This document shows positions 19,681 to 57,923 of a stretch of DNA of 64,000 nt, piece by piece (position 1 is the first letter of the stretch; each line of letters begins with the position of its first letter). The position numbers and the translations under genes were made by a program. The stretch spans positions 992,001 through 1,056,000 of the forward strand of contig NC_043020.1 in the NCBI RefSeq assembly GCF_006345805.1, written 5' to 3'. Under the pieces are notes generated by a model that was not told the DNA's origin, did no database searches, and worked only from the letters and a program-made list of their open reading frames with translations. Source of the DNA: Octopus sinensis (Eukaryota).

Positions 19681-19684
19681 ACCT

Positions 19685-24680: not shown

Positions 24681-24689
24681 GCCCTTGCT

Positions 24690-25140: not shown

Positions 25141-25243
25141 GGAGATTCTTGGACAATTTCACGACAGAAATAGGCCATAAATGGCGTCAGCAAGTAGCGA
25201 TTCCGACTTTGAAGGTTTTACTATTGATGATATTGAAGATATC

Positions 25244-29435: not shown

Positions 29436-30605
29436 TAGTGATGCTACTGTGTAGGGTTCGGCGCGCATGCGCAGAATGGGACTACTTCCGGGTGGCCACC
29501 GGAAGTCTTCCCCATGCGCATGTGCGGGAAAACGTCCCCCGAGCCCGCGAACCTCAAATCTCTGTCTTCGGCTAAGACAGCATTGCGATCGGTCACGAAT
29601 TCTCGGCTCTGACCGCCACACAACCAGCAACCAACTTCAACGACCAACACGAAGCAGTATATCAGAGGCTGTCTTTCCCCCACCAGACAACGTACTACAC
29701 TGAAATCAATAAACCAAACTACTGTCTGTTCACCCTTTTAACCCGAGTTCGTCTGTATTGTTTTCTGGAAGAATTTTATATGTGACTAGAAAGGATCTCG
29801 ACACCCTTCAAGTGCTTCGATAATAGATCCTTTCACGTTACAATTGGTGACCCCGACGTGAAAAAAAAAAAAAAGAACAGGATAGAAGACACAGCGAACA
29901 GGTTTTTTTTGCCGGAGAGCGCGGAAAATTCATATTTATTTTCATTTTTTTTTTTCTCTTTTTCAGCACGGCGAGGTGGGTCAAATAACATTATTCATCG
30001 CACTCAGTACACAAAACAACAAAAAAAAAACAGAAAAAAAAAGAAAACACACATTCATTTTTCCTTTTCTGTATTTTGTTTTCCTTGTACACACACTTAT
30101 TTTTTTTTGCTACCCACGAGGTGCACACACAAAACGCAATTTTGATTTGCTTTGTCGGTTCCACATATTCTCTCTCCATTTCTCGACCATACTCTCTGCC
30201 CCCTTCTCACAGATTCCTTCCGACAAAGGCATGGCTTCAGGTTTGCCTTCATTCACGGGGGATGCGGGGCTGTGGTTTGCACAGGTGGAATCACACTTTG
30301 CCGCGCATACCATTCCTCCACAACAGCAGTTACATCTACTGTATTCAAGTTTGCCCTTCCGGCTCGCAACATCGGTCAGGGATCTCATTGTGAGTCCCCA
30401 TCCTGACGCCACATATGCGTCAGTAAAGGCGGAAATCCTCCGTCGCAATACGCGCTCAGAAGAAAGTCAGTTTAATGAGCTGATGGCCGACGAGCAGTTA
30501 GGGGACAGAACTCCATCCCAGTTTCTGCGCCATCTAAGGGAGCTAAGCGGCAACGCAGCAAACGCGCCGCTCTTACGTAAAATATTTTTTTCAAGGCTGC
30601 CTGCA
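29434..30605 (+). mobile_element. Gypsy 5' LTR (to 29842), tRNA-Trp PBS, partial gag
   Basis: ...GTTACA then TGGTGACCCCGACGTGA (complement of the tRNA-Trp 3' end); gag LWFAQVESHF..LGDRTPSQFLRHL. Confidence 0.9.
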
Positions 30606-31420
30606 GAGTCGGTTGCGGTCTGCCTGTGCATTTACAAGATCTGTTCGCACGGAGTCGCCAGTGCTGAGATGGTGCTCAGGTGTTGAGGAAGCCACTGGTG
30701 AAGTATGCTGACGTGTTCTCTGCGGGGGATCGAGACCTCGGTTGCACGAACCTGGTGGAGCACCATATCGACATGGGTGGCCATCGCCCAATCAAGCAGC
30801 CAGCGCGGAGGATGGCCCCAGTTCAGCCACAGGAAATGGAAGAAGTGATGGAGGAATACCAACAACAGGGAATAGTGGAAAGATCGAACAGCCCCTGGTC
30901 GTCAGCCATTGTTTTAGTGCGGAAGAAAGACGGCACGGCGAGATGCTGCGTGGACTACCGAGCGCTCAATGAAGTGACGGTCAAGGATGCGCATCCTTTG
31001 CCGAGGATCGACGACACGCTTGATACTTTAGCGGGGGCTTGGTGGTTCTCTACCTTGGACATGAAGGCCGGGTACCATCAAATCAAGGTTGCTGAGAAAT
31101 ATAGGGAGAAGACCGCATTTTCGTACGGACGGGGTTTGTGGCAGTTCAGCGTGATGCCGTTCGGCTTGTGTAATGCCCCTGCGACTTTCGAGCGTCTGAT
31201 GGACCGAGTCCTGGAGGGCCTACACTGGCAGGCCGCCCTCATCTATCTTGATGACGTCATAGTGTTTGGCTGAACATTTGATCAAGAGCTGGAGAGGTTA
31301 TCAGGGGTATTCGAGAGGTTTCGAACTGCAAACCTCAAGTTGAATCCAAAGAAGTGCAGTCTGTTCCAGAAAGAAGTAGATACTTGGGACATTGTAGGCG
31401 AAGACGGTGTCTGTACCGAC

Positions 31421-31861
31421 ACACAGAACAAACAAAGGCCCCAGACCTACTTTTTATGTGTTGTGAGGAAGGGGGACACCGAGGACGCAAAAAGGATTTT
31501 TCAGGATGATGTATGGCAAGAGTATGAAGACGGTAGCTACGCGGTGTTTGATTCTGAACTTATGGACTCATTGACGAACAAGTGTAACGAATTGTGTATA
31601 AATTGTTTGACAGCGTATATGAAGGATGATATGATAGAGAGGTATGAAAGAGAAATGAAGGGTGAGGTAAAAAAGTTTGGAATTGTGATGGGAAACGGAC
31701 AGGTAAGTGATGCTGGCGGAGGGGGCCGTTAGCATCGCTTTCATATTATCATTTTTTTCATTTTAACATTCATTTACTCATAATTTTAATCATATTGTTT
31801 TATATCCCCCATGTCTTGTAATGTTCCCTCTTCGTCGCCCCTAGTGGGTAATAAAGAAATA
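31421..31861 (+). mobile_element. 5'-truncated non-LTR insertion (Tx1-like 3' end) with a 15-bp TSD
   Basis: GGTGTCTGTACCGAC at 31406-31420 and 31862-31876; ends GGGTAATAAAGAAATA like 9202-11850; excision restores Gypsy DGVCTDPEKV. Confidence 0.8.
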
Positions 31862-32104
31862 GGTGTCTGTACCGACCCAGAGAAGGTGGCCGCCGTGAAG
31901 GATTGGCCAGTCCCTGCTTGTGTGAGGGAGTTGAGGAGTTTCCCCGGGCTGTGCACCTACTATAGGCACTTTGTGAAGGACTTTGCTGCAGTGGCCGTGC
32001 TGTTGCACAAACTACTGGGGAAGAGCCAAAGGTTCGAGTGGACTGCCATAACACAGCGTGCTTTTGACAAACTCAAGCAAGTGCTGTTGAGTTCCCCTGT
32101 GCTG

Positions 32105-32212
32105 CCATGCTTTCTCTCCAGAATGCATTTCCTTGTGTTCTTTGAATATACTAGAGTCAGAAAATGTCTTTCCGAAATCCTTGCTCTGGAATGCTTTCTC
32201 CCCAGAATGCAT
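32105..32212 (-). pseudogene. Degenerate single C2H2 zinc finger fragment
   Basis: MHSGEKAFQSKDFGKTFSDSSIFKEHKEMHSGEKA; both HSGEK linkers kept, Cys codons mutated. Confidence 0.75.
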
Positions 32213-32534
32213 AAGCTGCAGAGTCCTTGGGAGGGGCCTTACATGGTGGTGAATCACCTGTCCGATGTGAAGTACAGGATTAAGGGAGGCAGGAGGTCTT
32301 CCCCGAAAATTATACATGCGAACCGTCTGTGGAGGTACCATGGGCCTGGCCGGTTCAGCTGGAGCACACCTTCGGCAGTTGGGAGCACCTGTTGAGAAGG
32401 TCGTTTGGAGATACGACTGTAGTGTGCTTCTGTCGGGTCGACTAGAAGCTTAAAGAGGGGGTAGTGTTACAGAGGAAAATAAACAGAAAAACATCGTGCC
32501 CCTTGTTCCGTTGGTTGGAGTTGAACCAGCGCTC

Positions 32535-32661
32535 AAAATCCCCTCACTGAATGATCTTAAACTTAGACCGATAATAGCAGGCCCAGCATGTGAAACCCAC
32601 CGCCTCAGCAACTTCTTAGACACACTGCTGAAACCTTTCCTTAAACACATCAAAAGCTACA
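32535..32661 (+). mobile_element. 127-bp Penelope family A RT snippet between about 73-bp direct repeats
   Basis: Close match to 4692-4820; repeats at 32462-32534 and 32662-32734. Confidence 0.85.
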
Positions 32662-33259
32662 TAATGCTACGGAGGTAAATAAACAGAAAAACATTGTGTC
32701 CCTTGTTCCGTTGGTTGGAGTTGAACCGGCGCTCCAGTTGTTAAGAAATTCCTAAATTCTAGTAATAAAATATTTATTAGGCGAAATACATTTTCGAACC
32801 ACCCAATATTTGGTAAATTTATAATACGAGATGAACACGTGAGAAAAAAAATGTGCTTAATTAGACGAAATAGCCCGCACCTAAATAATACTCACCCTGC
32901 CCTAATTACCCAACGAAACTAAGCAATCTACCACAAGCAAACCTCTACCCAACGAATTTACCAGTACAAGAACAAAACCGCATGGGCACGAGACAAAAAT
33001 CCCTCGCAGAAGGAGGACAAAAGGAAAGATACCATAGAAGGAAAAATGGCACACTGACTACTCCCGAAAGACGATATGCGGATGTAATGCGTGGTCTAAA
33101 AAAGATACTGCATGGCTCAACAAATGGTCAGCTTCATTCAGATGCGAGAAGGGCAGCAGCTGAACAGCAATCTTTTTTAGAAGAGCAAAACCAAATCCAC
33201 AATTCAGACCTGCAACTAAGGGAAGCAATGGCACTTGTCCAGGCCCCAACATTCATAGG

Positions 33260-34280
33260 AATTTTCTAACAAATTTAAACTTGCCAAGGAATTTCATGGC
33301 AAGCACATGGATGACGAATCAATAGCTAGAAACAACAGCGATTACACCTCTACCAAGGAAAAGAATAAAGCCTTAGACCGCTTTTGCGACCACATAACCA
33401 ATTTCTCTTTTCAACTCACAAATAAGCAAAAATACAGACCAAACCTCAACAAAAGAGAATGGAACGACCTCATCAAACTAAAAGAAATTAAAACCATAAC
33501 AATCAAGGAGGCAGATAAGGGCAATGCGGTAGTATTAATGAACACAAATGATTATAAAAATTGAGTACTACCTAGAAAAACTACCATTTCTAGACATCTG
33601 CGCCTTCTTTTGCCAACCTAGTAATGGGATACCTTGAAATAATACTTTACCAGAAAACACTCAAGAAATATGGAAACTCTTTCTCCACCTATATCCAGAA
33701 CAACTGGAAAAGATATCTCGACGACTGTTTCAATCTCTGGGATGAGAGTATAGAAAAACTTGAATTTAAAATTCTACTAAATGGAATTAATGGAAACATT
33801 CAATTCACAATAGAACATAACCTAGAAAAGACTACCATTTCTAGACATCCGCATTAAGAAAGTTGGGAACAAAATAGAGACGGTTATCTATTATAAACCG
33901 ACAGATTTATAAACTATTATAAAATATTATAAGCCAAAAGACCCAACTCATTACATACCACCCAAGAATGAATATCTCTTTCTGCTTAGCCAGAAGGATT
34001 TGCACCATAGTATCAGGCAGAAACACACGTCCCCAGGAACTCAGAACTACACTCATAAATAGGAATTATCCACAGCCCCTAATAGACAATACAATCCAAC
34101 AAGCACTTAAATTAAATATAGAAGACCCAAGACAACCAAAACCAAAAAAGGAAGAAAACTTAAAATCCCTACCCTACATCTCTACACACAACCCACTTAA
34201 CAATGAGGCCTTCAACACCATACTCCAAAGTACAGCGCTACTCAAGGGAGACTCAAAAATGAACCGAATCCTCCAAGATC
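33260..34280 (+). mobile_element. Penelope family A, deleted and scrambled RT fragment
   Basis: IKEADKGNAVV, RYLDDCF, YPQPLID, STHNPLNNEAF; close to 4835-5760. Confidence 0.88.
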
Positions 34281-34289
34281 AGCAATCAT

Positions 34290-35200
34290 CTATGGTAAAG
34301 CTGAATCCACCTGTGATACAGGCATAAACCACTGAAAAGAAGACATAAATTTTGTTTCCGTTTTAGTTGGAGAATTGTTCTCTGTCAACGAAAATGTCAG
34401 TATCCATAAGGTCGCTCGGCTAGGAAGATTACAAGCGAACCCAACCGCAGATACTAGACCACGCCCAATAAGGGTAATCTTTTCTTCTGATCGGGAGGCT
34501 TCAGTCTTTCTGAACAGAGCTGAGACGCATGCCTGGGAGGACCCCAATATGGGTTTTCACGAGGAATACTCACTAAGAGAGAGAATTCGCCGGAGGAACC
34601 TGATATCCGAGCTAAAGATGAGGAAACAAATGGGAGAGAAGGGTTTACGAATCCAAGATGGACAGATAATCAAGCCCTACCTCTGGTCACATGCTGTAGT
34701 GCTGACAGGGAAAGTGAATTGCGGGCGAATCAAAGTAAAGTAGATACCCCCGACAACGGTGCTATCTCCGATACCCCTTAGTCTGCTTGTTCCCCAATTC
34801 CCGCCACTCAAACTTCACAGCTCAGCATCGTCTATACCAACTCGTGCTCCTTATTTCCAAAGCTCAGTGAACTATTTACACTGGCCATACGTGACTCCCC
34901 TGATGTGATAGCTATCACCGAGACTTGGCTGACTCCAGCAGTAAAGGACTCAGAAATCCACCTACAGGGCTATGCCCTCTTCAGATGTGACAGAGAAAAA
35001 AGGCAAGGTGGGTGTTGCTGTGTATGTTAAATCTGATCCCAAACCGTCCAGCGGTATTCTACCCACTAATGCTCAACCTACAACGAAATTTGATGCCGTC
35101 TATTGCAAGCTGAGCCTATCCGGGTTTTGCCTGCCCGTGTTAGCTGTCTACAGACCACCTCTTGCCGACCTCTGGGTCTCTAATCTGTTGTCGGTGTACA
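34290..35200 (+). mobile_element. CR1/L2-type LINE: ORF1 C-terminus plus APE start
   Basis: RLGR..RPRPIRVIF..ERIRRRNLISELKMR..GEKGLRI; YTNSCSL..IAITETWL..RCDR..GGVAVYV..VYRPP. Confidence 0.82.
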
Positions 35201-35214
35201 CGTGAGCGTTCTGA

Positions 35215-36800
35215 AATACATTCGAAATGGATATCTTTAGCGGCACCCATACTTCCTCGGAAGTACCTAATTAATGAAATTGCAGGAGAACCAGAGGAAG
35301 AAACAAAACTTCGATAGGATCTTAGTTTGATAAAATTCAGGACCGACATCTCCATTACCCTGTCTAAACAATCCCACTACAAAGCCAAATACGAAGCTAT
35401 CGATGATCAAATCATAGACGAAATATCCAAACTAACGACCGGCAATATAGCAGAAAAAATGCGAGAACTATGGACCAGAGATATCTCAAAAGAAGAAAGC
35501 AGATCAAGAAAGTTTTGGCAGCGGAAACAATTATTTCTCGACAAATATGCTACAAATTACGGTAAAGACACTTCTACGGCTTACCAAAAATACATAAATC
35601 AAAAGATATTCAACAGGCAATAAAAGAACAAGAAAGTGAGTACATAAAATTACTACATCCAAAAGACCCAAAACTTAGACCAATTATAGCTGCTCCAGCA
35701 TGTCCTACCCACCGTCTAAGCAATTTTATTGACATTGTTTTGAAACCACTATGTACTTACATACCAAGTTTCATCAGGGATGACATTGACTTCTTGTCCC
35801 ATCTTCCCAAAACAACAGAAACAAATTCGGTTTTACTAAGTTTTGATGTGGTAAGCCTCTACACCAATATTCCACACGATTTAGGAATAAAGGCGATTAA
35901 ATACTGGTTAGAAAAACATAGAGAAGTGATTCCCAGCAGATTCACAGTGCCATTTATATTAGACACAGTCAAACTTATTCTAGAAAACAACACATTCTTC
36001 TTCATGGAAAGAATTACATCCAAATTAGAGGCACGGCGATGGGAACGAGGTTTGTTCCCGTTTACGCCAACTTTGTAATGGGATACTTAGAACAACTCGA
36101 CCAAGAGGTGGAGGTAAACTATGGCACTGGATTTAGAAAGTATATTGAAAAGGCATGGAAGAGATACCTTGACGACTGCTTCATAATCTGGACAGAATCT
36201 CTAAATACTCTGGAAGAGTTCAATATCCTCCTGAACAACCTACACCCATCTCTCCAATTTACAAAGGAGATGAGTAGTACCAAATTACCATTCCTAGATA
36301 TAATGGTAATCAAAAAGGACACCACCAACACCACAGATATATACTATAAACACAGACACACATCAATACCTGAATTTTAAGTCGTGCCATCCACCACATA
36401 CAAAACGCAACATCCCATACTGCCTAGCCAGAAGAATTTGTACCATTGTAGAAGATGCAAATGTCAGGAACAAACGCCTAACAGAACTAAGAGAATTTTT
36501 GCTCAAACAAAAATACCCATCTCTACTTATAGAAAATGGCACACAGCGGGCTATAAAAATACCCAGACAACTTAGGACAACCCAAGGAATAGGAAAACAA
36601 GAACAAGTCATACCATTCATAGTGACACACAACCCATGTCACCAGAATATCTTCAACATTGCCAAAGCAAACCTACCAATCATTGCTCAAAGTAATGAAT
36701 TAAAAGATGTAATCACGGATCGAGCTATGGTTCTTAGTAAAAGACAGCCTAAAAACTTGAAAAAAATTACTAACAAAGGCAAAAATTTGACCTTAGCAAC
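35215..36800 (+). mobile_element. Penelope family A (third subfamily), N-terminus, RT and thumb
   Basis: LRPIIAAP, SFDVVSLYTNIP, RYLDD, LPFLDIMV, SCHPPH..RNIPY.LARRI. Confidence 0.9.
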
Positions 36801-36829
36801 AAAGACCAAACATTCACTGTATCTAAATG

Positions 36830-37170
36830 GAATGATAGCTGTTGTGGCTATATGTCCCTTGGATGGTTCCTGTGTGTAGTCAAGGACAAGTTAAATAAAT
36901 TTTATATAGGAAGCACGGTAGATTTTTAAGGCTAGATATAGATCGCAAATGAGCTCATTTTCTAACGACAAATATTGTAATTCAACAACACTTGCATCCC
37001 ATATACATAATTTGAAGAAAAATAATAAGAATTATTATCTAGAATGGTCCATTGTCTCTAAAACCCCAAATTTCAAGGGAAATATTAACAGGTGTAAGCC
37101 GTGCATAAAGGAATCCCTTACCACCCTTAGGGGTTATGGATCACACGCTGAATAAATTTACTGATGTGAT
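36830..37170 (+). mobile_element. Penelope family B GIY-YIG fragment
   Basis: CPLDGSC, FYIGST, NSTTLASHIHNLK...WSIV...CKPCIKE. Confidence 0.8.
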
Positions 37171-37343
37171 TCCTTTTTGCATCCATAAATTCTCATCTAC
37201 ATTCTTCAAAGTGTATAGGAATAAAATAAGCTGTAGCAAATAAATAATTTAGCTCTTACAGGGAATTGAAACCACGGAGGTTGAATTTAATTTAATACAC
37301 CCATTTTTTTTATTTTTAATTTTTAATTTATAAAAAAAAACTT

Positions 37344-37388
37344 TATCATTGCAATATCTGTGGTAAATCATTCTCTCGAAGTGGTGAC
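37344..37388 (+). pseudogene. Half C2H2 zinc finger fragment
   Basis: YHCNICGKSFSRSGD. Confidence 0.7.
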
Positions 37389-37394
37389 AGACTT

Positions 37395-38030
37395 ACAGAC
37401 TATATACCAAATTGGGACCGGCTCGAAAGCAATGTGACCATCTGCAGTTCCTAGCAGATGTAGCAATGCAAGTAAGAGGTGGTTATTCCTAAAAAAAAAA
37501 AAAAGAAAAAAGAAAAAAAAAACCTAGGGAAAAAACAAAAGCCTGCCAGGGGAATATCGATCTGAATTCAGCACATCATCATCATTTAACATCTGCTTTC
37601 CATGCTAGCATGGGTTGAACCGTTCAACTGGGGTCTGTGAAGCCGGAAGGCTTCATCAGGCCCAGTCAGATCTGGCAGTGTTTCTACGGCTGGATGCCCT
37701 TCCTAACGCCAACCACTCCGTGAGTGTAGTGGGTGCTTTTTACGTGCCCCCTGCACAGGTGCCAGACAGAGCTGGCAAATGGCCATGAACGGATGGTGCT
37801 TTTACGTGGGGGGCCAGGCGAGGCTGGCAACGGACACGAACGGATGGTGCTTTTACATGCCACATCCCCATAAATTAGAAAGAAATCAAGGGTCGCAAAA
37901 AGCAGTGTTAAGAATGCCTTCATCAAAAAAGGAAAGCTTCTAGTGGAAGGGCTGTAGAAACAACTTTCCAATGTGCATTCTGCAAGGTTGTATTATGCAG
38001 AACAAGGTGCTTTGCAAGTTTTCACGATAG
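37395..38030 (+). mobile_element. piggyBac C-terminal region, interrupted by an RTE tail
   Basis: Similar to 15100-15380; GRAVETTFQCAFCKVVLCRTRCF. Confidence 0.82.
37577..37862 (-). mobile_element. RTE LINE 3' tail ending in (GAT)n
   Basis: Reverse complement of the tail family at 53615-54133; short CACATC duplication at the flanks. Confidence 0.85.
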
Positions 38031-38419
38031 GAATATTGTTTGATTTGTATATATGTGTATGTGTGATTTGATTTTATAAACATTTTCAGGTTGAGAATAT
38101 GAAATGACGCTAAACGTTGTAGTCGAGGGAAGGAGACCTAACTGCTATCTATGCTGAGCACGAGGACACACAAAGACCGAGTGTCCTTTATGTGAATTCT
38201 CACAAAGTGAAGAGACAACGGAAAAACAAAATAAGAGCAAAAGAAAGAACATTTGCAGGAAAAAGTATAAACAGAAGGAAAAAAATTAGACAAGAACGGG
38301 AGTTGGCAGCCCTGACCCCTGAAGACTCTCACGAGTCCTTTTGGCCAGAGCTGCCCTCTTGGTTTCTACCTGCTAGGCAGTTTCACCCAGCAGGGACCAT
38401 GTAGATGGTTTAACGTAGG

Positions 38420-39059
38420 AATTTTTTTGATTTATTGGGGGGGGGGGGGGGCAATTTGGGGAACGGTAAAAAAAATTTTAATTTAGGGGGAAAAGTTTTG
38501 AATTTGGGAAAGCTAAAAATTTTTTTTTAATATGGGTTAAATTTGAAAAAAAACAAATTTCTTCAAATTTGGAAAAATAAAATTTTTTAATTTAGGGGGG
38601 AAAGTTTTGAATTTGGGAAAATATGGGTTAAATTTGAAAAAAAAATTTCTTTGGAAAAATGAAAAAAAATCTTTAAAAATTTTTTTTAATTTAGGGGGCG
38701 TTTGAATTTGGGGGACAAGTTTTAAATCTGGGAAAAAAATTTTTTTTTTATATGGGAAAATTTGAAAAAAAAAAAAAATTCTTAAAATTTGGAAAAATGA
38801 AAAAAAAAATCTTAAAAAAATATTTTTGTTTACGGAGTTTTGAATTTAGGAAAGCTAAAAATTTTTTTTTAATTTGGGGAGGGAAAAGTAAAAGAAAAAT
38901 TTTTTTTAATTTGGGGGGACAAGTTTTAAATTTGGGAAAAAAATTTTTTTAATATGGGAAAATAAAATTTCTTCAAATTTGGAAAAATGAAAAAAAAAAT
39001 TTTTAACAAGCATAAAACACAAAAATAAAACAAATTCACAAAAATTTTCTCTGCAAATA

Positions 39060-39090
<31 letters not shown>
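38420..39090. repeat. Degenerate A/T/G homopolymer-rich tandem repeat or low-quality sequence
   Basis: Recurrent TTTAATTTAGGGGG-AAGTTTTGAATTTGGGAAA units of about 130 bp with variable homopolymer lengths. Confidence 0.7.
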
Positions 39091-39093
<3 letters not shown>

Positions 39094-39611
39094 ATGGGAT
39101 GGTTTATATGCAGTGTATAAAGCAGAGTTCTGCCGAACAATTTTTCTGTCCCAGCTGGTGATTTCAGTTTTCACAAATGGGAATAAATGACTTACAGTAT
39201 ATATCAACATACAATCTGCATCCCTTGCAAACCAATGACGTATTTGAAAGGGTGGTGAAATTAAGAACAACTGAGCCCTGAATATCAACATATGTGGCTT
39301 TTGTAATGACTGGTACAGCTCAACAGGTAAAAAGGGTGTATTTAAAACAGCCATGACCTCTTCTTTCTAGCAGATGTCAACAACAGAGACTAAATTGGAA
39401 CTGGAGTATCAACCCAAGCTGGAGCACCCACATCAGCCACAAAGGCCAGCAGGATGTACCCTTGGATTCTTAGAGACCTTTCTGTCCCCTATGTCTACAG
39501 AGCCCCTCACATGCTGTACTCAGTCCCACTGAGGTGGTCTCTTCTCACTAAAAAAAAATATTAAGTGAACAATTTGTAGAGATCACTAACAGAAGATAAG
39601 CGCAGAAGATA

Positions 39612-40012
39612 AGTGGCTGTGTGGTAAGTAGCTTGCTTACCAACCACATGGTTCCGGGTTCAGTCCCACTGCGTGGCACCTTGGGCAAGTGTCTTCTGCA
39701 ATACCCTCGGGCTGACTAAAGCCTTGCGAGTGGATTTGGTAGACGGAAACTGAAAGAAGCCCATCGTACATACGTCGTGTGTGTGTGTGTGTGTGTGTGT
39801 GTATGTTTGTGTGTCTGTGTCCCCCCCCCCACAACATTGCTTGACAACCGATGCTGGTGTGTTTACATCCCCGTAACTTAGCGGTTCGGCAAAAGAGATC
39901 CGATAGAATAAGTACTAGGCTTACAAGGAATAAGTTCTGGGGGTCAATTTGTTCGACTAAAAGGTGGTGCTCCAGCATGGCCACAGTCACATGACTGAAA
40001 CAAGTAAAAGGG
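39612..40012 (+). mobile_element. tRNA-derived SINE, family 1
   Basis: GTGGCTGTGTGGTAAG A-box, GGTTCAGTCCC B-box-like motif, internal TG tract. Other copies: about 48403-48785 (+), 49397-49725 (-), 50316-50700 (+), 52440-53010 (-), 59640-60016 (-), plus fragments at 45510, 53430, 61110 and 63020. Confidence 0.9.
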
Positions 40013-40031
40013 AAGATGTTAATCACCCCTT

Positions 40032-40069
<38 letters not shown>

Positions 40070-40438
40070 GCAACCACCCTAAAGAGAGAGAAGAAAAAGG
40101 GCACTATAGTGTTAGTAACACACCATCAGCAACTTCAAACTCATATTTCTCAATATTTCAACAAATTCTTTCAGAGAGTACCAAACAGAAGATCAACACC
40201 TGGAAATGCTTCAGACAAAACCCATTTCCTACAAGAGTAAGATATAGGGTCCCCCACAATAAGATTTTAAAATCCCTTCATCCAGGTGATGATATATTAA
40301 TTTTGACATAACCTTCAACAAAACTGGCTAAAAAATAAGCTCATATACAGCTTTGTCCCTTCTGTTATGTTACCTGCATTGCATCAATATATAAACAGCT
40401 GCTCTCTTACAATTTACCTCTCTTGGTTCAGCCCCATT

Positions 40439-40704
40439 CTACACCATGTGGGGTAAGGCACCGTAATCTTTCTCCATCTCTTCTGCAGCGACCAACAAAC
40501 GTCGGTCCTCCTCATCGTCGTCAGCATCCATCGACAGGTCGGTCACTTCTTGCTTCCCCTCCATCACTTCTACAGCTTCGACCAAGAGGGAATCATCGAT
40601 TTTTTCCTGGCTTTCCAAAGCATCAACCAAGAGGCTGTCTTCAAAGTCCTCATCCAATGTGGTGTCATTCAGCCAGGGAAGTAGATTGTCAGGCAACAGA
40701 TAAT
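40439..40704 (-). CDS. PRIMPOL: PrimPol terminal coding exon 14, acidic tail, TAG stop
   Basis: ttttaAG acceptor; DYLLPDNLLPW then D/E-rich repeats; stop at 40439-40441. Confidence 0.92.
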
Positions 40705-41339
40705 CTTAAAAGGAAGAGATTATATTTGTATGTATATGTATTTGCATGTGTATATATGTATAAGTATTTGTATGTATATGTATGTATTACTTTATAAAAA
40801 TAGGGTAAAGTAAAATAATTTACTTTACCACACACCGAGCTTTTTAGAAATAGCAGCCAAAAATTTGGCTATTTCTTCTACTGCAAGAAAAAGTCTCCCA
40901 GACAATGCATACTCAGAAATAACTCACATAGGTATAAGGGAAAAACAATGAAAGATCACATCCATACGAGATCACCCGAGGACAAGCCTGTTTCTGGATT
41001 AGTGGATTAAACGTCAACATTTCCTTCATCAGCTCAGAGATTTCTTCTGATTTAGATTTGAAAGTACTAAGAATCAAACATACCCGTCCGATATTGGTAA
41101 CACCGGACAAACCATGCCAGACCACCAGTACTGTATGTACGTATGTGTGTACATGTGTATGTGTGTGTGTGTGTGTGTGTATGCATGAATGTGTATGTAT
41201 GTATATGCATGTGTGTGTGTATGTATATGCATGTGTGTGTGTATGTATATGCATGTATGTGTATGCATGCATGTGTATGTATGTGTGTATGTATGTATGT
41301 ATGTATGTGTGTGTATGTATGTATGTATGTATGTATGTA

Positions 41340-41386
<47 letters not shown>

Positions 41387-43633
41387 ATGTATGTATGTAT
41401 GTATGTATGTATGTATGTATGTATGTATGTATGTATGTGTATGTATGTGTATGTATGTATGTATATATGTATATGTATTTGTATGCATATGGATTATATA
41501 TGTATGTATAGATTAATGCTTTGATATGGAACAACTTATTTATTCTTGGAGACTGCTCGTAAAGCAAGAACTCGTAAAACAGAACAATAACTTCCCAGTA
41601 TAGCAATGTTATAAATTGTAATTCATTCCCAGAACAATATTTTACCAATAAAATTCATAATACTAATAACAGTGAAATGTAGAGAATCAAGAGTCAAGAC
41701 TATTGAAAAGGTTGCAAGACGCAATGAAAATAAAAATAAGAAATAAGTGGAAATTTTACCAGTGAGTGTGTTATATTATAAGGCACAAAAAGAGAATGAC
41801 TCTCCCCAGACATAATAGAATATGCTTCAACCTTAGTCACAATTTATGTTCCTAACACCAGCTTAATGATAACTAAGTTATTTTACTAAATTCTTTGTTA
41901 TATTTACAATTAATTGAAAGAAACACAGAGCATCTCAAAATAAATATGGTAATGGAAGGGTTAACAGAAACAGCAATTGATTACAGCAGGGAAAAGGGGA
42001 GGGGGTCAGTAAAAAAAATGAGGTCCAAAAGTAGTGATTTTCAACCAGGGTCCATATAAACTTTGGTGGTGGTGGTGGGGGGGGGGGTCTATGCAACAAA
42101 ATAGTAAATTGGGGTTTCTTCTATGATTTGTCAATTCTGGCCATTTTTCCAGTTTCATTAGTTATTGACAGCAAACATCTAAATTGATTGTTTGGTTCCT
42201 TGGAAGCAGCTCCAATTACACATTTTGATTTATTGTATTAAGTGGAATCTCTTTTCAGTTTTTGTGGAACCCAAATATCGAGCTTGTTAACGAGACCAAG
42301 ACATTTTAAGTGATTTGCAATTGTTGTGTGTGATACATTCAACCTCTCTGCAATCTCTCGCACAGTTACATGACAATCAGATTAAATAATGGCTTTGATT
42401 CGGTCATCATCAACCTTAGTAGGCCAACCAGAATGCTGGTCATCTTTGGGTGAAAAATCTTCCGAATAGAAATTCTAAAACCATTTCTGACATGTGCGTT
42501 CTATTAAGCAATCAACACCATAAACTTTTTCGTGAGACTCAGCAGCTTTCTTGCCTTTACGGAAATTAAAAAGCAAAATATGGCGAAAATGCCTATTTTT
42601 GCACTCGTTAAAATTGACACTGAAATAACAGCTGTAAACAAAAACTATGCGCAATTTGTTTCTAAAGTAAGCTAAAAGTAACGGCTATCAAATGTCAGAA
42701 GGAAAAAAAATCATAACATCAAAAGTTATCAAAAAAAATTCTATTTACGAAAATCGAAATTACTTTCTTGCCAATCCCTATAGTTTATAAAACCCCTAAT
42801 GGTTATGGGGGTCCACCAGAATAAGATAGTAATCAAAGGGGTCCATAGATAGAAAAAGGGTGAAAACCCCTAATCAAAAGGAAGAAATGAAAGATCACCT
42901 CTCTCATACCTTCAGAACGGTAATTAATCCGTTTGCAATCTGGATCGTGGCATTTCTGATAATAAACACATTGCTTCAGGTCCACTATTAGTCTGGAAGA
43001 GAAAAATGGGAGGAAATTCTTCTTCAGAAAAACACCAAAAAGGAAACGTAGCCATTTCTTTACAATTTGCATTTCAATTTCTCTTCAATATTTTTTGGTT
43101 TTTGGTTCCTTTTGATAAACTTGACAAAATATATTCAAGAAATTCAGTTAAGATTCCAATGTCTTCATCTTCTGTCAGGTAGTTTATCCTGTCCTCCAAC
43201 CCTTAATTCATGTAATTGAAAAAAAAACCTTATTTATGGGACTACCCAATATAAAAATATATAAAGCACCACTCGAGCATGGTCAATGCCAGTGCCACTG
43301 GACTGGCTCCTGTGCCAGTGGCATGTAAAAAGCTAGTGCCACCAGACTGGCTCCCATGCCTGTGGCCCATAAAAACCACCAATCAAGCGTGGTCAATACC
43401 AGTGCCATCTGAATGGCTCCTAGCACCATCCAAGCATGGTCGATGCCAGTGCCGCCTGACTGGCCACTGTGCAAGTGGAATGTAAAAGCACACTATACTC
43501 TCAGGGGGGTTAGCATTAGGACGTGCATCCAGCTGTAGGAACTTTGCCAGTCCTCAATCGAACCGTCCAACCCATACCAGCAAGGCAAGCAGACATTAAA
43601 TGATAATGGGGACGGGGGGGGGGATCAATCCTC

Positions 43634-43668
<35 letters not shown>

Positions 43669-46600
43669 AACAAACACAGGTCTCAACTTCCTTTTCACAC
43701 ATAAATAATGAGCAACCCCCCACCATGTATGTATATACAGGTCAAACTCCCTTTTCAAGGGATCTAAACCCTTCTCTGTGATACTGAAATTCTTCAAAAT
43801 ATACACAAGACTAACAAAAAAAAATTTCTTTAATTAATCTCCATCTTTAAGCCTTTCATATTCAGATTAATCTGTTTCAACAGAATGCAATGTTAGTTTA
43901 TATTTTTTCAAAATTAATCCAAGATTATCTTATAGTTCAAGAGATTTCGATAATGTGATTGGTTACTTTTAGAACAAGATATTAGGGTTGTTGTTCGAGG
44001 CCGGATCTGGCCAGTTTCAACAACAAGACAGGTCAATCATTTTGGCCCAATATGGTCAGTTTGAATGCGTACAGAAAAAATAATAACAAATGTTAGGAAT
44101 TAATTTGGAACTGAAGTGAAAGCAATTTCCTTACCTGATGTTGTTACTTCGGTGTTCACGACCAATGTTACCGCACCATCGGTACTGGCAGATGTCATAG
44201 CCCAAGAGATTCTCATTGCTGAAATACATCCATCGGAAGACTCTTCCTTTGCGGCCTTCAGAGGAAATGATGGAGTTTATAAATGCATCGATCTCAGGAT
44301 ATGGCGAAGGATTCGAAGAATAGTCTCCTTTGAGGTTATCTGTAAGGATGAACGATGAACTTAGGTTCTCATATACTTGTAAGGGTGTCTTTAGAGAGAA
44401 AGTGAAAGAGGGGCACCAGTGCCAGTACTTTTTACGTGGCACCAGCACCTGAACCATGGTCCCTTCTAATATAGACACAAAGCCTGAAATTTTGCTGGAG
44501 AGGGGGCTAATTGATTCCATCCACCATAGTTCTTTATTTTATCAACCCCTTAACCCTTTAGTGTTTAAACCGGCCCGAATATTCTCACATTTTATGCTCA
44601 AACTGGCCAGAGCCAGCATCTCACACCTACCCTGCAATGTCATTCTAAAAATAAACAATTACATTTTTCAAATCTTGAAGTTACAAGATAATACCAGATT
44701 AATATTTTAAAATGTAAATGAATAAGGATTACTTTTGACATATTAATTTGAACACTAAAGGGTTAAAGGCGGCGAGCTGGCAGAATGGTTAGCACGCCGG
44801 GTGAAATGCGTAGCTGTATTTCGTCTGCCGTTACGTTCTGAGTTCAAATTCCGCCGAGGTTGACTTTGCCTTTCATCCTTTCGGGGGTCGATAAATTAAG
44901 TACCAGTTACGCACTGGGGTCGATGTAATGGACTTAATCCGTTTTGTCTATCCTTGTTTGTCCCCTCTATGTTTAGGCCCTTGTGGGCAATAAAGAAACA
45001 AATTTTATCAACCTCAAAAGGATGAAAGGCAAAGTCAACTTCAGTGAAATTTGAACCCAGAACAAAGCCAAAAGAAATGCTGCCAAACGTTTGCCTTAAA
45101 ATACTAATAAGAAAATCGTTCGTACCTTCATTTTTTTGTACGGCCAACAATCTCTTCTGTTTCAACTTTATTTCATCAGGAGTGCTAAATGTTAAGATCC
45201 TCAGGTCCTGATGGTATCTAGAATACAAAAATTATTTATATATATATATATTTATTACCTCAATACATTTGACTAATATAAGCACAATGAGATACTTTAT
45301 CTACAGGCTGAAACAGCTGTAAGATTTTATATGTAATATTTTTATGGTATTATCTTACTTGATGTATATTGTTTTCTGTTGGATTTGGATGTTCCTATTT
45401 AATTAGTTCATAAATTATATGAATTGGTATTATCTGTAAGTTGATGATTGAAAGGAATCTGTTCCTCCATTTTCTTATTTTGTATATATATATATTTTTC
45501 TTTTATTTGTTTAAGTCATTTGACCGTGGCCATGATGGAGCAATGCCTTTAGTCAAACAAATCAACCCCAGGCCTTATTCTTTGTAAGCCTAGCATTTAT
45601 TCTATCGGTATCTCTTGCTGAACCGCTAGGTGACGGGGACGTAAACACGCCAGCATTGGTTGTCAAGCGATGCTGGAGGGACAAACACATTTGAGGAAAA
45701 ATTACTGGGGTCAATTCATTTTACTAAAAATTCTTCAAAGCAGTGCTGTAGCATGGCCACAGTCTAATGACAAGTAAAAGATAAAAAAAACAAAAAACAT
45801 ACTTACTGTACATTGGCAATTAGGGAATCATAAAAGAAACTCTGCTGATCCGATTGATCTGTAGGGTATTGATTATGATCCGACACAAGAAAAGGATTCT
45901 TTTTGCCAAGCTTTGAGGACAGGAATAAACGAAAGTTCCGATTCTTTGAGTAGACACCTGAAGGAGAGACAAGACATAGAAACCATAAGGAGAATTTTTT
46001 TCTGATTAGGTAAAGGAAGGACAGTAGTTGATATGACTTGGCACAACGTGATGGTTATCAAATGATAGAGAGATCCGGTTGGCCTAGGGTTACATAAGAC
46101 ACTTGCCCAAAATGCAATGCAGTGGGAAAGAGGAATTGAACATAGAACCACGAGGTTGGAAAGCAGTCGTATTACCACATAGCCATGTGTGTGTTATGAT
46201 GTGCCTCTTTAACGTCCATTAGTCAAATCTACTTAACCCTTTCATTAACATATTCATTTTGAGATGCTCTGTGTTTCTTTCAATAATTTTAAATATAACA
46301 AAGAATTTAGAAAAATAACTTAGTTACCATTAAGCTAGTGTTAGGAACACAAATTGTGACTAAGGTTTGGTGGAAGATTTTAATTCAAAACTTAAGAAAA
46401 CAAGACATTTGTACTACAGAGCCAGAGGCGGTTTCGGACGGGTTGGTAACAAATGGGTTAACCAGGTGCCATAATGTGAGACAGAAGCCGCAATCTCACA
46501 TGGTTAGGAAGCAAACCTCTTAAGCACCCAACCACATCTGCTCCTGAAAGCATCAACAAACAAGGAAGCAGGCAAGAATGACGATTATTCCTTAACTGTA

Positions 46601-49600
46601 CAGATACTTACCAAGATCACAGATTGCAGTTTCATCTCCATCTTTGTCGAAAACCACGGTTTCTTTTAAATCTGACGGAGAAAATTGTGAAAGAACTTTC
46701 CCTGGCTCACACAAGATGTCACGGCCGTTTATGACAACAGAAGATGAGGAGTTCATGTTTCGTGTTGGAGATGAGGTGGATGCTGGTAATTGTGGCGAAA
46801 GATGCTGCTGTCTTGAACAGGAACTATCCTTCATAGTTGCTGGTGTTGCTGAGGGAGTTTTAGACGGGTCAACCACCGTAGGCTCTTCTTGTAACAGTGG
46901 CTTACTTTGTTCCGAGTCTGCTCTGTTCTGCCGTAACCAAGTTACAAGATGAGAACAGATAAACTGAACAAACGAACCTGGATTTCAACAGAAAAAGAGA
47001 AAAAAAAGCCAATTTACATTTGTGTGTATGTGTGTGTTTGTGTGCGTGCACACACTTGTTCATGCATGGGTGGGCCAGCCTGCTGCCTTAATTTTCTATT
47101 ATAGGCACAAAGCCTGGAATTACGTGGGAGGGGGGTCAATTTCATTGATCCTAATATTTGACTGGTACATATTTCTTCAACCCCGAATGAATGAAAGGCT
47201 AAGTCAACCTCGGTAGCATTTGAGCTCAGAATGTAAAGACAAATGAAATACCGCTAGGCATTTCATCTGGCATGCTAACAATTCTGCCAGCTCACCATAA
47301 CAAATGCCCTGATGCAGTACCAGGCAGTGGCTCTCGTGGCTTCTGATCTTAACTGATTGGAAGTGTTATCATGTACATTGTTATTTCTTGGTATAAAAGA
47401 TGGGCTACAGCAAATATTCTGCTCAATACCACAGATTTGCTTGTCAGTTGTTTGACCTTAACCAGTTGAGCATGTCCCTTAGTGGCTGACGATATGTGCA
47501 TCTCTGATCACGAGCAGAAGTAGTAGGGGAGCATCATAGCCGTGTTGAAAGGAATTCTTTAGGGTTTGAATAATTCACCTCTGGAAACGTAGGTTTTTCA
47601 CTCAACATCCTTAAACAACCCTTATTCATGGACCTTTTGAGCAAGATAGCTTACTCGACCAGAAGAAAATTCTAACTGGGCCCCCACCTGCAAGATCATG
47701 TGCTGTTTATCTTGATACGAGATCACCATGTCGTGCACATATGGTTGTGATGCATGTGCCTAGTGTACCCTTATCAGACGGGTAGTCATGATGGGTATAC
47801 TGGGCTTCGTATATTTTACCCCAGTGTCACTTTGATGGCATGCACTGCTCTCTCACTCAATAATAATAATAACAGTTTCAAACTTTGGCATGAGGCTAGA
47901 ATGGTTTGGGAGAACAGGCAAGTCAATTACACCCCACCCCCCCAGTGCTCCACTGGTTCTTATTTCATCAGCCCCGAAATAATGAAAGGAAAATTTGACC
48001 ATGGCAGCATTTGAATCAAGAACATAAAATCAGAAGAAATGTTGCTAAGCATTTTGTCCAGAATGCCAACGCTTTTGTCAGCTCACCGCTCTGCTAGAAA
48101 TCAGATGCTATAAATATGTAGCAGACTTACCGACATGCGAATTGTCTTTGAACGCTGCTTGGTTGAGGATAAAGATCAAATGTTCACTGTATTTGGAACT
48201 GGTACTGCAAAACAAAAAGAAAAAGAAAAAAAGAAATTGGAAAGGTGTTTGAAATTAGCATCACCACCACTATAATCATCATGAAATAGCAGTGAGGGAA
48301 TGTTTAGTTGGTCACTCAACATGCAAGAAATAGCTGTTAAATCTCCATAAACTTACACCCCGTAACATCTTACTGGAAAAAAAAATTCTATTATGTATAA
48401 GTAGGCTCAAGAGTGGCTGTGTGGTAAGTAGCTTGCTTACCAACCACATGGTTCCTGGTTCAGTCCCACTGCGTGGCACCTTGGGTAAGTGTCTTCTACT
48501 ATAGCCTTGGGCTGACCAAAGCCTTGTGAGTGGATTTGGTAGACGGAAACTGAAAGAAGCCAGTCGTATATATGTATGTGTTTGCCCCCCCCCTAGCATT
48601 GCTTTACAACCGATGCTGGTGTGTTTATGTCCCCGATACTTAGCGGTTCGGCAAAAGAGACCGATAGAATAAGTACTGGGCTTACAAAAGAATAAGTCCC
48701 AGGGTCGAGTTGCTCGACTAAAGGCAGTGCTCCAGCATGTCCGCAGTCAAATGACTGAAACAAGTAAAAGAGTAAAGAGAGTAAGAGTATAGCCAGAGAC
48801 ATTTGCGTGTGTGTGTGTAATAATAATAATCCTTTCTACCTTAGGCATAAAGCCTAAATTTTGGGGAGAGGGAACCAGTCAATTACATCGACCCCAGTGC
48901 TTAACTGGAACTCATTTTATCGACCCTGAAAGAATGAAAAGCAAAGCTGACCTCGGCAGAATTTGAACTCAAAAGACTTAACGATACGCCGCTAAGCATT
49001 TTGCCCAGTATGCTAACAATACTACCAGCTCACTGCCTTTATAATAATAATAATCTCTACTATAGGCACAAGGGTGGAATTTAAGGAGAGCGAGATAGTC
49101 AATCACACTGGCCCAGTACATGACAGGTACCCCAATTTGTCGACTCCAAAAGACAAAGTTGACCTTGGCAGAATCTGAACTCAGAACGTAACAGTAGACG
49201 AAGTATCTATTTCTTTACTACCCACAAGTGGCTAAACACAGAGGACAAACGGATTAAGTCAATTATATCGACCCCAGTGTGTAACTGGTAGTTATTTAAT
49301 CGACCTCGGCGGAATTTGAACTCAGAACGCTGTGGCAGACGAAATACCATTAAGCATTTCACCCGGTGTGCTAACCATTCTGCCAGCACACCACCTTTAC
49401 TCTTACTTGTTTCAGTCATTTGACTGTGGCCATGCTGGAGCACCGCCGTCAGTCGAGCAAATCGATCCCGGGACTTATTCTTTGTAAACCCAGTACTTAT
49501 TCTATCGGTCTTTTTTGCCGAACCGCTAAGTGACGGGGACGTAAACACACACACATACACATAAATACGACAGGCTTCTTTCAGTTTCCGTCTACCAAAT

Positions 49601-56593: not shown

Positions 56594-56642
<49 letters not shown>

Positions 56643-57881: not shown

Positions 57882-57923
<42 letters not shown>

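What the first reader, a model, noticed from the sequence alone, without database searches (positions are those of the whole stretch)
38100..40440. PrimPol points straight into the archive and lacks an obvious poly(A) signal: possible read-through-fed precursor
Seen: PrimPol is on the minus strand and stops at 40439, about 2.3 kb from the archive edge. Scanning by eye, I found no AATAAA or ATTAAA on the minus strand between the stop and about 39000, only variants (AATATA near 40293, TATAAA near 39103) and long U tracts (40034-40067, 39062-39090). Established: read-through of upstream genes feeds piRNA clusters in mosquitoes. Inference: a broadly expressed replication gene could supply the promoter for the antisense TE archive.
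Basis: partly seen in the sequence, partly recalled or inferred. Interest (0 to 1): 0.75.

Follow-up and report, generated by a model that had tools for sequence, protein, structure and literature searches.

The report
Ordinary PrimPol 3' end beside transposon block
This is the tail end of the octopus PrimPol gene; the missing textbook poly(A) signal in its first 1.5 kb is what chance predicts, usable signals lie before the neighbouring transposon block, and the idea that the gene feeds a piRNA cluster stays untested.

Summary
The window is Octopus sinensis CM016882.1:992001-1056000. PrimPol (XP_029650693.1, 592 aa) lies on the minus strand. Its CDS runs 61513->40439 and ends in TAG at 40441-40439.

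There is no AATAAA or ATTAAA on the minus strand from the stop down to 38954. The variants AATATA (40298), AATACA (39342) and TATAAA (39108) are present, as are the T34 and T29 tracts.

The gap is not unusual:
- Dinucleotide shuffles give zero hexamers 36% of the time.
- 30% of minus-strand positions in the window are equally bare.
- In O. vulgaris, 29% of mapped cleavage sites lack any recognised signal.

Signals do exist before the transposon block. A TATAAA conserved in three species is followed by U29 and GU-rich sequence. Seven ATTAAA and one AATAAA then follow at 38953-38431.

There is no contig join, because O. vulgaris is collinear through the region.

The geometry is real. From 2.4 to 38 kb the block is almost wholly co-oriented antisense to PrimPol, and O. 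bimaculoides shows the same arrangement with different elements.

That fits a one-strand piRNA cluster but does not show one, and no RNA data could be reached. Most likely this is an ordinary long 3' UTR and terminator. I put read-through feeding at about 12%.

The parts
40439..61513 (-). PrimPol coding span: about 14 exons, start codon at 61513-61511, stop TAG at 40441-40439.
   Evidence: tblastn of XP_029650693.1 (P0001) gives exon pieces at 89-100% identity. Locus L001, which encodes P0001, is identical to the window's minus strand. PF03121 (UL52-type zinc finger) is on record for the product.
40439..40705 (-). Last coding exon (residues 505-592, acidic C-terminal tail) plus the stop codon.
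   Evidence: 100% tblastn match at 40705-40442; ORF 40439-40696. O. vulgaris has the same C-terminus. In O. bimaculoides TAG is GAG and the protein runs 4 residues longer.
40068..40438 (-). Proximal unique 3' flank. It carries the variant hexamer AATATA at 40298-40293 and a 5'-splice-site-like GAG|GTAAAT about 20 nt after the stop.
   Evidence: 92-95% identical to O. bimaculoides over the first ~300 aligned columns, against about 87% in the last intron. AATATA is AATATG in O. bimaculoides. Zero CpG in 371 nt.
40034..40067 (-). T34 tract (A34 on the + strand). It is an ancestral tract of variable length, not a SINE tail.
   Evidence: TRF. It is T24 in O. vulgaris and T18 in O. bimaculoides, which lacks the adjacent SINE.
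39611..40014 (+). A SINE copy (tRNA-type box B-like GGTTCAGTCCCAC) inserted antisense to PrimPol. It is shared with O. vulgaris. O. bimaculoides has a different SINE at the same spot.
   Evidence: At least 14 related fragments at 72-89% identity in PrimPol introns and none in 1-39.6 kb. Three-species alignment.
39091..39610 (-). Distal unique 3' flank with the variant hexamer AATACA at 39342-39337.
   Evidence: 85-93% identical to O. bimaculoides. 3 CpG in 520 nt, o/e 0.14.
39000..39108 (-). Best candidate poly(A) site: TATAAA (39108-39103), CA dinucleotides, U29 (39090-39062), then a GU-rich stretch. It implies a 3' UTR of about 1.34 kb.
   Evidence: Downstream U content of 0.82 is the highest of all 16 hexamers scored. 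TATAAA is conserved in O. vulgaris and duplicated in O. bimaculoides. Actual cleavage here is an inference.
38401..39061 (.). Low-complexity satellite made of A, T and G runs. On the minus strand it carries 7 ATTAAA and 1 AATAAA (38436-38431). G15 lies at 38437-38451. The + strand has AATAAA at 38576, 38961 and 39024.
   Evidence: It is present and collinear in O. vulgaris with no Ns. It is present in O. bimaculoides, where the assembly breaks into an N gap.
38100..38400 (.). No CpG island and no repeat match within the window.
   Evidence: CpG o/e 0.52. Self-BLAST finds nothing here. Conserved in O. vulgaris.
2400..38100 (+). Transposon block ('archive') with Penelope-like, LINE-like, LTR/gypsy and piggyBac fragments, almost all with their sense strand on +, so antisense to PrimPol.
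   Evidence: Pfam on + strand ORFs: RVT_1 three times, GIY-YIG, DDE_Tnp_1_7 twice, Integrase_p58_C, DUF7041 and zf-CCHC. 9 of 9 internal repeats are direct. ORFs of at least 150 codons: 24 on + against 5 on -. AT skew is positive in nearly every 1-kb window from 5 to 38 kb. The only clear minus-strand fragment is at 420-1139.

Best explanation
The interval is the ordinary 3' untranslated region and terminator zone of Octopus sinensis PRIMPOL.

Shown:
- The last exon ends in TAG at 40441-40439.
- Downstream lie 371 nt of unique sequence, an ancestral T tract, a SINE inserted antisense, and 520 nt of unique sequence.
- Next come a TATAAA conserved in three species, then U29 and GU-rich sequence.
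- Last is a 660-nt A/T-run satellite carrying seven ATTAAA and one AATAAA on the PrimPol strand.

Inferred:
- RNA polymerase II transcripts of PrimPol are mostly cleaved and polyadenylated in this zone. The most likely site is about 39.09 kb (3' UTR about 1.34 kb). Back-up sites are the ATTAAA/AATAAA hexamers at 38.95-38.43 kb.
- The bulk of PrimPol transcription therefore ends before the transposon-coding block.
- The lack of a textbook hexamer in the first 1.49 kb is a chance-level property of a T-rich, 39% GC sequence. It is not a designed leak.

The co-orientation of the neighbouring transposon block is real, but this explanation does not account for it.
For: - Gene identity and stop codon.
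- The hexamer-free gap is expected by chance: P(0)=0.36 in shuffles, and 29.8% of minus-strand positions are equally bare.
- Eight canonical hexamers and three single-base variants lie on the minus strand before 38.4 kb. TATAAA at 39108-39103 has the most U-rich downstream context, 0.82.
- That TATAAA is conserved in O. vulgaris and O. bimaculoides.
- In O. vulgaris, 71% of FLAM-seq cleavage sites carry A(A/U)UAAA or variants. Octopus therefore uses the canonical machinery, yet 29% of sites have no recognised hexamer.
- The unique flank down to 39.09 kb is extremely CpG-poor (3 CpG in 891 nt), more so than the gene body (o/e 0.54) and the block (0.73). This is weakly consistent with an old transcribed and methylated gene part.
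- Canonical hexamers are not significantly depleted on the block's minus strand: 24 observed against 31.5 +/- 5.6 expected. There is no sequence sign of selection for uninterrupted minus-strand transcription.
Against: - No transcript 3' end could be obtained. The poly(A) site is predicted, not seen.
- A 1.3-2.0 kb 3' UTR is 3.5-5 times the octopus median of about 380 nt.
- TATAAA is a weaker signal than AATAAA, and the ATTAAA copies sit in a context poor in G/U. Some read-through is therefore plausible.
- The flank is only marginally better conserved than the last intron (89.4% against 88.5% over well-aligned blocks, the latter figure including one exon block). Conservation does not mark a UTR boundary.
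- The near-total antisense orientation of the downstream transposons is left unexplained.
Confidence: 0.6

Rival explanations
1. One reading: a fraction of PrimPol transcripts escapes cleavage in the 3' zone and runs on for tens of kilobases through the antisense transposon fragments. This read-through RNA is processed into piRNAs, as in mosquito core clusters. PrimPol would then supply the promoter of a one-strand cluster.
For: - PrimPol's direction of transcription points into the block, and two independent assemblies join them without a gap.
- The block is almost entirely antisense to that direction: all Pfam-confirmed domains are on +, 9 of 9 internal repeats are direct, and long ORFs split 24 to 5.
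- The distance from gene to block is under 2.3 kb, inside the 5-kb criterion used for Aedes aegypti.
- O. bimaculoides carries different, non-orthologous transposon fragments downstream of its PrimPol, again antisense. That is the pattern of a conserved trap with turnover.
- The first strong signals are a variant hexamer and ATTAAA copies in a poor context.
- Antisense insertions in host 3' UTRs suffice to make piRNAs in Drosophila.
- PIWI genes are present in octopus.
Against: - There are no small-RNA, RNA-seq or chromatin data for this locus.
- No octopus piRNA-cluster map was found.
- The 'missing signal' is at chance level.
- Eight canonical hexamers must be bypassed before the block, and 24 more lie inside it, with no significant depletion.
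- Part of the co-orientation comes from local direct duplications, so the insertions are not all independent.
- The O. bimaculoides evidence rests on two homology-confirmed fragments in a heavily gapped assembly.
Confidence: 0.12
2. The block is transcribed on the minus strand, as a flamenco-like one-strand piRNA cluster or a long non-coding unit, from its own promoter at or below 38.4 kb. PrimPol is merely a neighbour that terminates normally.
For: - The same orientation evidence applies.
- Canonical signals and the satellite at 38.4-39.06 kb could insulate the two units on both strands. The + strand also has AATAAA at 38576, 38961, 39024 and 39182.
- Well-studied one-strand clusters such as Drosophila flamenco have their own promoter (established knowledge; it is named as the master locus).
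Against: - No promoter can be recognised from sequence. There is no CpG island at 38.0-38.4 kb (o/e 0.52-0.55).
- No gene was called within 10 kb downstream of PrimPol in either O. sinensis or O. vulgaris.
- There are no RNA data.
Confidence: 0.15
3. The block is an inert, transposon-rich intergenic stretch. Its co-orientation comes from nested insertion, local tandem duplication and chance, not from transcription. PrimPol may even end early, at the AATATA 141 nt after the stop, which would give a 3' UTR of about 165 nt.
For: - Several direct repeats are local duplications: 19690-20264 and 20878-21453 at 95%, 3268-3536 and 4090-4358 at 96%, 25602-25965 and 28495-28873 at 93%.
- The fragments are degraded and full of stops.
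- The octopus median 3' UTR is only about 380 nt.
- The block differs from the gene in SINE content in the way intergenic DNA often does.
Against: - At least four unrelated superfamilies share the orientation, including two piggyBac fragments, and duplication cannot explain that.
- The orientation recurs in O. bimaculoides with other elements.
- AATATA is not conserved (AATATG in O. bimaculoides) and has an ordinary downstream context.
Confidence: 0.13

Closest known systems
Read-through core piRNA clusters of mosquitoes (Qu et al., bioRxiv 10.1101/2022.08.22.504762)
   Same: A protein-coding gene lies directly upstream and co-directional. There is a short gap to a block of foreign or transposon fragments that are antisense to the direction of transcription. 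Upstream genes are orthologous between related species.
   Different: In mosquitoes the clusters were first defined by small RNAs. Read-through was then shown by RNA-seq, Pol II and H3K36me3 continuity and by knockdown. None of that exists here. The mosquito upstream genes also make normally terminated mRNAs, so a missing signal is not part of that model.
Drosophila flamenco-type one-strand piRNA cluster
   Same: Tens of kilobases of degraded transposon fragments from many families, nearly all in one orientation, next to a conserved flanking gene.
   Different: flamenco has its own promoter and is defined by piRNA output and genetics. Here neither a promoter nor piRNAs are known.
piRNAs from antisense transposon insertions in host-gene 3' UTRs (Rafanel et al., EMBO J 2026, PMC13226689)
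   Same: An antisense repeat (the SINE at 39611-40014) sits inside the probable PrimPol 3' UTR, and more antisense elements follow.
   Different: That mechanism was shown for the retrovirus Tirant in Drosophila somatic follicle cells. A SINE in an octopus UTR has not been tested.
Canonical metazoan cleavage and polyadenylation with variant hexamers
   Same: A single-base variant (UAUAAA) is followed within 12 nt by a long U tract and GU-rich sequence, and stronger hexamers lie distally. Octopus 3' ends use the canonical machinery.
   Different: The actual cleavage site is not mapped. The implied 3' UTR is several times the octopus median.
Vertebrate PRIMPOL (CCDC111), an archaeo-eukaryotic primase-polymerase with a UL52-type zinc finger
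   Same: Same domain family (PF03121). Motifs recognisable by eye: DxE (YFDVEF), SxH (SEHLIF), zinc-finger Cys/His (CGNIGREH...CHDPDC) and an acidic C-terminal tail. E-values of about 1e-54 to 1e-48 to vertebrate proteins.
   Different: About 33-37% identity to vertebrate proteins, with a longer linker between the catalytic motifs. No biochemical data exist for the octopus protein.

Membership tests
Read-through-fed piRNA cluster (mosquito type) | piRNA-sized (about 25-31 nt) small RNAs with 1U bias mapping densely to one strand of the block | not testable with these tools
   No small-RNA data were reachable. No octopus cluster map was found in the literature library.
Read-through-fed piRNA cluster (mosquito type) | A co-directional expressed gene ending a short distance upstream of the cluster start (under 5 kb in Aedes aegypti) | tested here: met
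   The PrimPol stop is at 40439 and the block starts at 38.1 kb or earlier. Adjacency is confirmed in two assemblies. Expression of PrimPol itself was not tested.
Read-through-fed piRNA cluster (mosquito type) | Transposon or viral fragments predominantly antisense to the direction of transcription | tested here: met
   All Pfam-confirmed domains are on the + strand, 9 of 9 internal repeats are direct, and long ORFs split 24 to 5.
Read-through-fed piRNA cluster (mosquito type) | Continuous RNA, Pol II and H3K36me3 signal from gene into cluster with no promoter mark at the cluster start; piRNA loss on knockdown of the upstream gene | not testable with these tools
   This needs RNA-seq, ChIP and knockdown. 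From sequence, only the absence of a CpG island at 38.0-38.4 kb could be noted, and that is not diagnostic.
Flamenco-like one-strand cluster with its own promoter | A defined transcription start site at the cluster's proximal edge | not testable with these tools
   There is no eukaryotic promoter or CAGE resource here. CpG o/e is unremarkable.
Canonical metazoan poly(A) site | A(A/U)UAAA or a single-base variant upstream of the cleavage site | tested here: met
   TATAAA at 39108-39103, AATACA at 39342, AATATA at 40298, seven ATTAAA and one AATAAA at 38953-38431.
Canonical metazoan poly(A) site | U-rich or GU-rich downstream element | tested here: met
   U fraction is 0.82 at +10 to +50 after TATAAA, followed by GU-rich sequence. 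It is 0.50-0.55 after ATTAAA at 38690 and 38591.
Canonical metazoan poly(A) site | Observed cleavage and poly(A) addition at the site | not testable with these tools
   No transcript contig of this gene with a 3' end was found.
PrimPol (AEP primase-polymerase with UL52 zinc finger) | Homology across the catalytic core and zinc finger to annotated PrimPol proteins | tested here: met
   E=3.9e-231 to the O. sinensis protein, to which all recovered exon pieces map. E-values of 1e-61 to 1e-48 to mollusc and vertebrate PRIMPOL. PF03121 is on record.
PrimPol (AEP primase-polymerase with UL52 zinc finger) | Primase and polymerase activity | not testable with these tools
   Biochemistry is required.

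The most novel reading that the evidence does not exclude
The 36-kb co-oriented transposon block downstream of PRIMPOL is a one-strand piRNA cluster that keeps its position next to PRIMPOL across Octopus species while its transposon content turns over. At least part of its precursor RNA comes from PRIMPOL transcripts that pass the weak TATAAA/ATTAAA terminator zone. This would be the first read-through-fed piRNA cluster described in a cephalopod.
Probability: 0.12. Interest if true: 0.55.

Novelty: already known. Interest (0 to 1): 0.22.

Why it matters
As it stands, this is a normal gene end, and the value of the check is negative. A hexamer-free 1.5 kb after a stop codon in this genome is not a signal, and should not be used alone to nominate read-through loci.

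The positive lead is the neighbour. The block of at least four transposon superfamilies is almost entirely antisense to PrimPol, is shared with O. vulgaris and is mirrored in O. bimaculoides by other elements.

If small-RNA data showed it to be a piRNA source, it would give cephalopods, for which no cluster map was found, a first anchored cluster. It would also give a direct test of whether gene read-through, known from mosquitoes, is used outside insects.

Tried and rejected
1. Transcript 3' ends from public run assemblies.
- A search with the C-terminal 116 residues found no short products.
- Exact look-ups of two ORFs inside the 3' flank found nothing.
- The only Logan PrimPol transcript (L004, another cephalopod) stops 192 nt after its stop codon without a signal or tail.

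2. Supplements of the O. vulgaris FLAM-seq paper. No entry for this gene or its stop-codon coordinate was found in the stored, truncated tables.

3. Conservation as a marker of UTR extent. The flank (89.4%) is barely above the last intron (88.5%), so it is uninformative.

4. Contig-join artefact at 38.4-39.1 kb. Rejected for O. sinensis, because O. vulgaris is collinear with no Ns. O. bimaculoides does have an assembly gap there.

5. U tracts as SINE poly(A) tails. Rejected for the T34 tract, which exists in O. bimaculoides without that SINE.

6. Orthology of the block in O. bimaculoides. Rejected, because only paralogous piggyBac and LINE matches at about 79% or at protein level were found, and they are in a different order.

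7. Depletion of poly(A) hexamers on the block's minus strand as a sign of selection for read-through. Not significant.

8. Known RNA families in 36.5-41.5 kb. Only sub-threshold microRNA-like hits on a (TGTA)n microsatellite.

9. Pfam on the O. bimaculoides downstream ORFs. No hits, as the fragments are too short.

10. CpG island at the block edge. None.
Full report
**Where the window comes from and what the gene is**

A spliced query assembled from minus-strand exon pieces found the Octopus sinensis 'DNA-directed primase/polymerase protein-like' product XP_029650693.1. It is 592 aa with E=3.9e-231. Hundreds of mollusc and vertebrate PRIMPOL proteins followed, all carrying PF03121.

The locus encoding that protein is GCA_006345805.1 chromosome CM016882.1, and it is base-for-base the window's minus strand. 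The window is therefore CM016882.1:992001-1056000.

tblastn places 12 exon matches between 61513 and 40442 at 89-100% identity. Two further short exons near 50.1 and 48.2 kb are seen in the ORF listing.

The last exon is 40705-40439 and ends in TAG at 40441-40439. PrimPol on the minus strand, stopping at 40439, is confirmed.

**The poly(A)-signal observation**

On the minus strand there is no AATAAA or ATTAAA from 40438 down to 38954. The first ATTAAA is at 38953-38948 and the first AATAAA at 38436-38431.

The single-base variants are AATATA (40298-40293), AATACA (39342-39337) and TATAAA (39108-39103).

- The 1485-nt stretch is T-rich and 39% GC.
- 2000 dinucleotide-preserving shuffles contain on average 1.02 canonical hexamers, and 36% contain none.
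- 29.8% of all minus-strand positions in this window are followed by at least 1485 nt without a canonical hexamer.

Biologically, O. vulgaris FLAM-seq data show that 71% of cleavage sites carry A(A/U)UAAA or variants, so 29% carry no recognised signal. The median 3' UTR is about 380 nt. The same gap exists in O. vulgaris and O. bimaculoides. However, these sequences are 99% and 89% identical to the window, so they are not independent observations.

**Anatomy of 38100-40440, read in the PrimPol direction**

- 371 nt of unique sequence (40438-40068), 92-95% identical to O. bimaculoides over the first ~300 aligned columns.
- A T34 tract. It is ancestral (T24 in O. vulgaris, T18 in O. bimaculoides) and is not the tail of the adjacent SINE.
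- A 404-nt SINE whose sense strand is + (39611-40014). It is shared with O. vulgaris. O. bimaculoides has a different SINE at the same spot.
- 520 nt of unique sequence (39610-39091).
- TATAAA (39108-39103), followed after 12 nt by U29 and then a GU-rich stretch.
- A 660-nt low-complexity satellite built of A, T and G runs (39061-38401). It carries seven ATTAAA and, next to a C15 run, one AATAAA.
- 300 nt without any match.

Among the 16 hexamers scored, TATAAA at 39108 has by far the most U-rich downstream context (0.82). It is conserved in all three species and duplicated in O. bimaculoides.

The two unique segments hold only 3 CpG in 891 nt. CpG o/e is 0.54 in the gene body and 0.73 in the transposon block. 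That is weakly in line with the flank down to about 39.1 kb being an old, transcribed part of the gene. I treat this as a hint only.

**Is there an assembly join?**

No, for this species. The independent O. vulgaris assembly (OX597837.1) is collinear with the window from the last intron through the satellite and 8 kb into the block. Identity is 96%, 93% and 98% in three pieces, with no Ns in either sequence.

In O. bimaculoides the same satellite is present, but the assembly breaks into an N gap inside it.

**The neighbour**

From about 2.4 to 38 kb, every ORF with a Pfam transposon domain lies on the + strand:
- reverse transcriptase plus GIY-YIG (Penelope-like) and two further reverse transcriptases;
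- two piggyBac transposase fragments;
- an integrase C-terminus;
- a gag-like DUF7041 and a zinc knuckle.

All nine internal repeats of at least 200 bp are direct and none is inverted. ORFs of at least 150 codons number 24 on + and 5 on -. AT skew is positive in nearly every 1-kb window from 5 to 38 kb. The one clear minus-strand fragment is at 420-1139.

Some of the direct repeats are local duplications, so the insertions are not all independent. Even so, at least four unrelated superfamilies share the orientation.

The abundant SINE of the PrimPol introns has at least 14 fragments there, 5 antisense and 10 sense to the gene. It has no copy at all in the block.

The geometric half of the finding is therefore real. 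PrimPol transcription points into a distinct compartment whose transposons are antisense to it.

In O. bimaculoides the sequence after the gap is not orthologous to the block. Yet its recognisable fragments, a piggyBac and a LINE C-terminus, are again antisense to PrimPol, and all the other long ORFs but one lie on that strand. This evidence is thin: two confirmed fragments in an assembly full of gaps.

The precedent is sound. In four mosquito species many core piRNA clusters start directly after a co-directional gene and depend on its transcription. In Drosophila, antisense insertions in host 3' UTRs suffice to make piRNAs. PIWI genes exist in octopus.

Three things weaken the specific argument:
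- The missing hexamer is at chance level.
- A plausible variant site and eight canonical hexamers lie between the stop and the block.
- The block's minus strand carries 24 more canonical hexamers, not significantly fewer than the 31.5 +/- 5.6 expected. No sequence signature of selection for uninterrupted transcription is present.

In the mosquito work the upstream genes also give properly terminated mRNAs, and knocking down 3'-end processing factors had no clear effect. A weak signal is therefore not a feature of that mechanism.

No octopus piRNA-cluster map was found in the literature library. No transcript or small-RNA evidence for this locus could be reached.

**Verdict**

The most likely reading, at about 0.6, is an ordinary but long PrimPol 3' UTR. 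It would end at the TATAAA/U29 site near 39.09 kb, with back-up sites in the ATTAAA-rich satellite.

The alternatives are:
- read-through feeding of a one-strand piRNA cluster, about 0.12;
- a cluster or non-coding unit with its own promoter, about 0.15;
- an inert transposon-rich stretch, about 0.13.

The finding as written is of low interest. The co-oriented block is worth a look with existing small-RNA libraries.

Noticed in passing
window 38401-39061: A low-complexity satellite made almost only of short A, T and G runs, with G15 at 38437-38451. It is conserved in position in O. sinensis, O. vulgaris and O. bimaculoides, and the O. bimaculoides assembly breaks inside it. It carries poly(A) hexamers on both strands, so it could act as a two-way terminator. 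On the + strand it ends in AATAAA (39024) plus A29, like the tail of a retroposed element.
   Followed up: partly
window 1-39610 versus 40440-64000: The SINE at 39611-40014 has at least 14 related fragments in the PrimPol introns (5 antisense, 10 sense to the gene). It has none in the 38-kb transposon block, which holds only autonomous-element fragments and one copy of a second SINE type at 37574-37769.
   Followed up: partly
L003 24755-32955 (O. bimaculoides, downstream of PrimPol): Non-orthologous transposon fragments (piggyBac at 26173-27081, a LINE C-terminus at 24756-24974, and further TE-like ORFs at 28513-30382) all lie antisense to PrimPol, as in O. sinensis. The region is heavily gapped (2671 N in 8201 bases).
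   Followed up: partly
window 40034-40067 and 39611-40014; L003 23296-23620: Just downstream of the same ancestral T tract, O. sinensis and O. vulgaris carry one SINE type while O. bimaculoides carries a different one. These look like two independent insertions at one hotspot.
   Followed up: partly
window 40439-40441; L003 22936-22955: The PrimPol stop codon TAG is GAG in O. bimaculoides, which lengthens that protein by four residues (…HGGEWG).
   Followed up: yes
window about 40410-40420: A 5'-splice-site-like GAG|GTAAAT lies about 20 nt after the stop codon and is identical in all three species. It might mark a 3' UTR intron or mean nothing, since the whole flank is 92-95% conserved.
   Followed up: no
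window 41132-41509 and 40723-40787: (TGTA)n and related microsatellites in the last intron give sub-threshold Rfam hits to mir-297 and mir-466, families that are themselves repeat-derived. These are not real microRNA genes.
   Followed up: yes
window 39091-39610 and 40068-40438: The unique parts of the 3' flank are almost free of CpG (3 in 891 nt, o/e 0.0-0.14), although GpC is normal. They are far more depleted than the gene body (0.54) or the transposon block (0.73).
   Followed up: partly
window 51211-51966: Three tandem partial copies of a piggyBac-like fragment sit inside a PrimPol intron, also with their sense strand on + (antisense to the gene).
   Followed up: no
L002 (O. vulgaris) gene model P0121: The O. 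vulgaris annotation gives a 644-aa protein. It has 48 extra N-terminal residues, an 8-residue gap and one differing internal segment relative to the O. sinensis model. These are probably annotation differences rather than biology.
   Followed up: partly
window 19690-21453, 3268-4358, 24693-28873: There are local direct duplications inside the transposon block (93-96% identity), so part of its co-orientation is due to duplication rather than independent insertion.
   Followed up: partly
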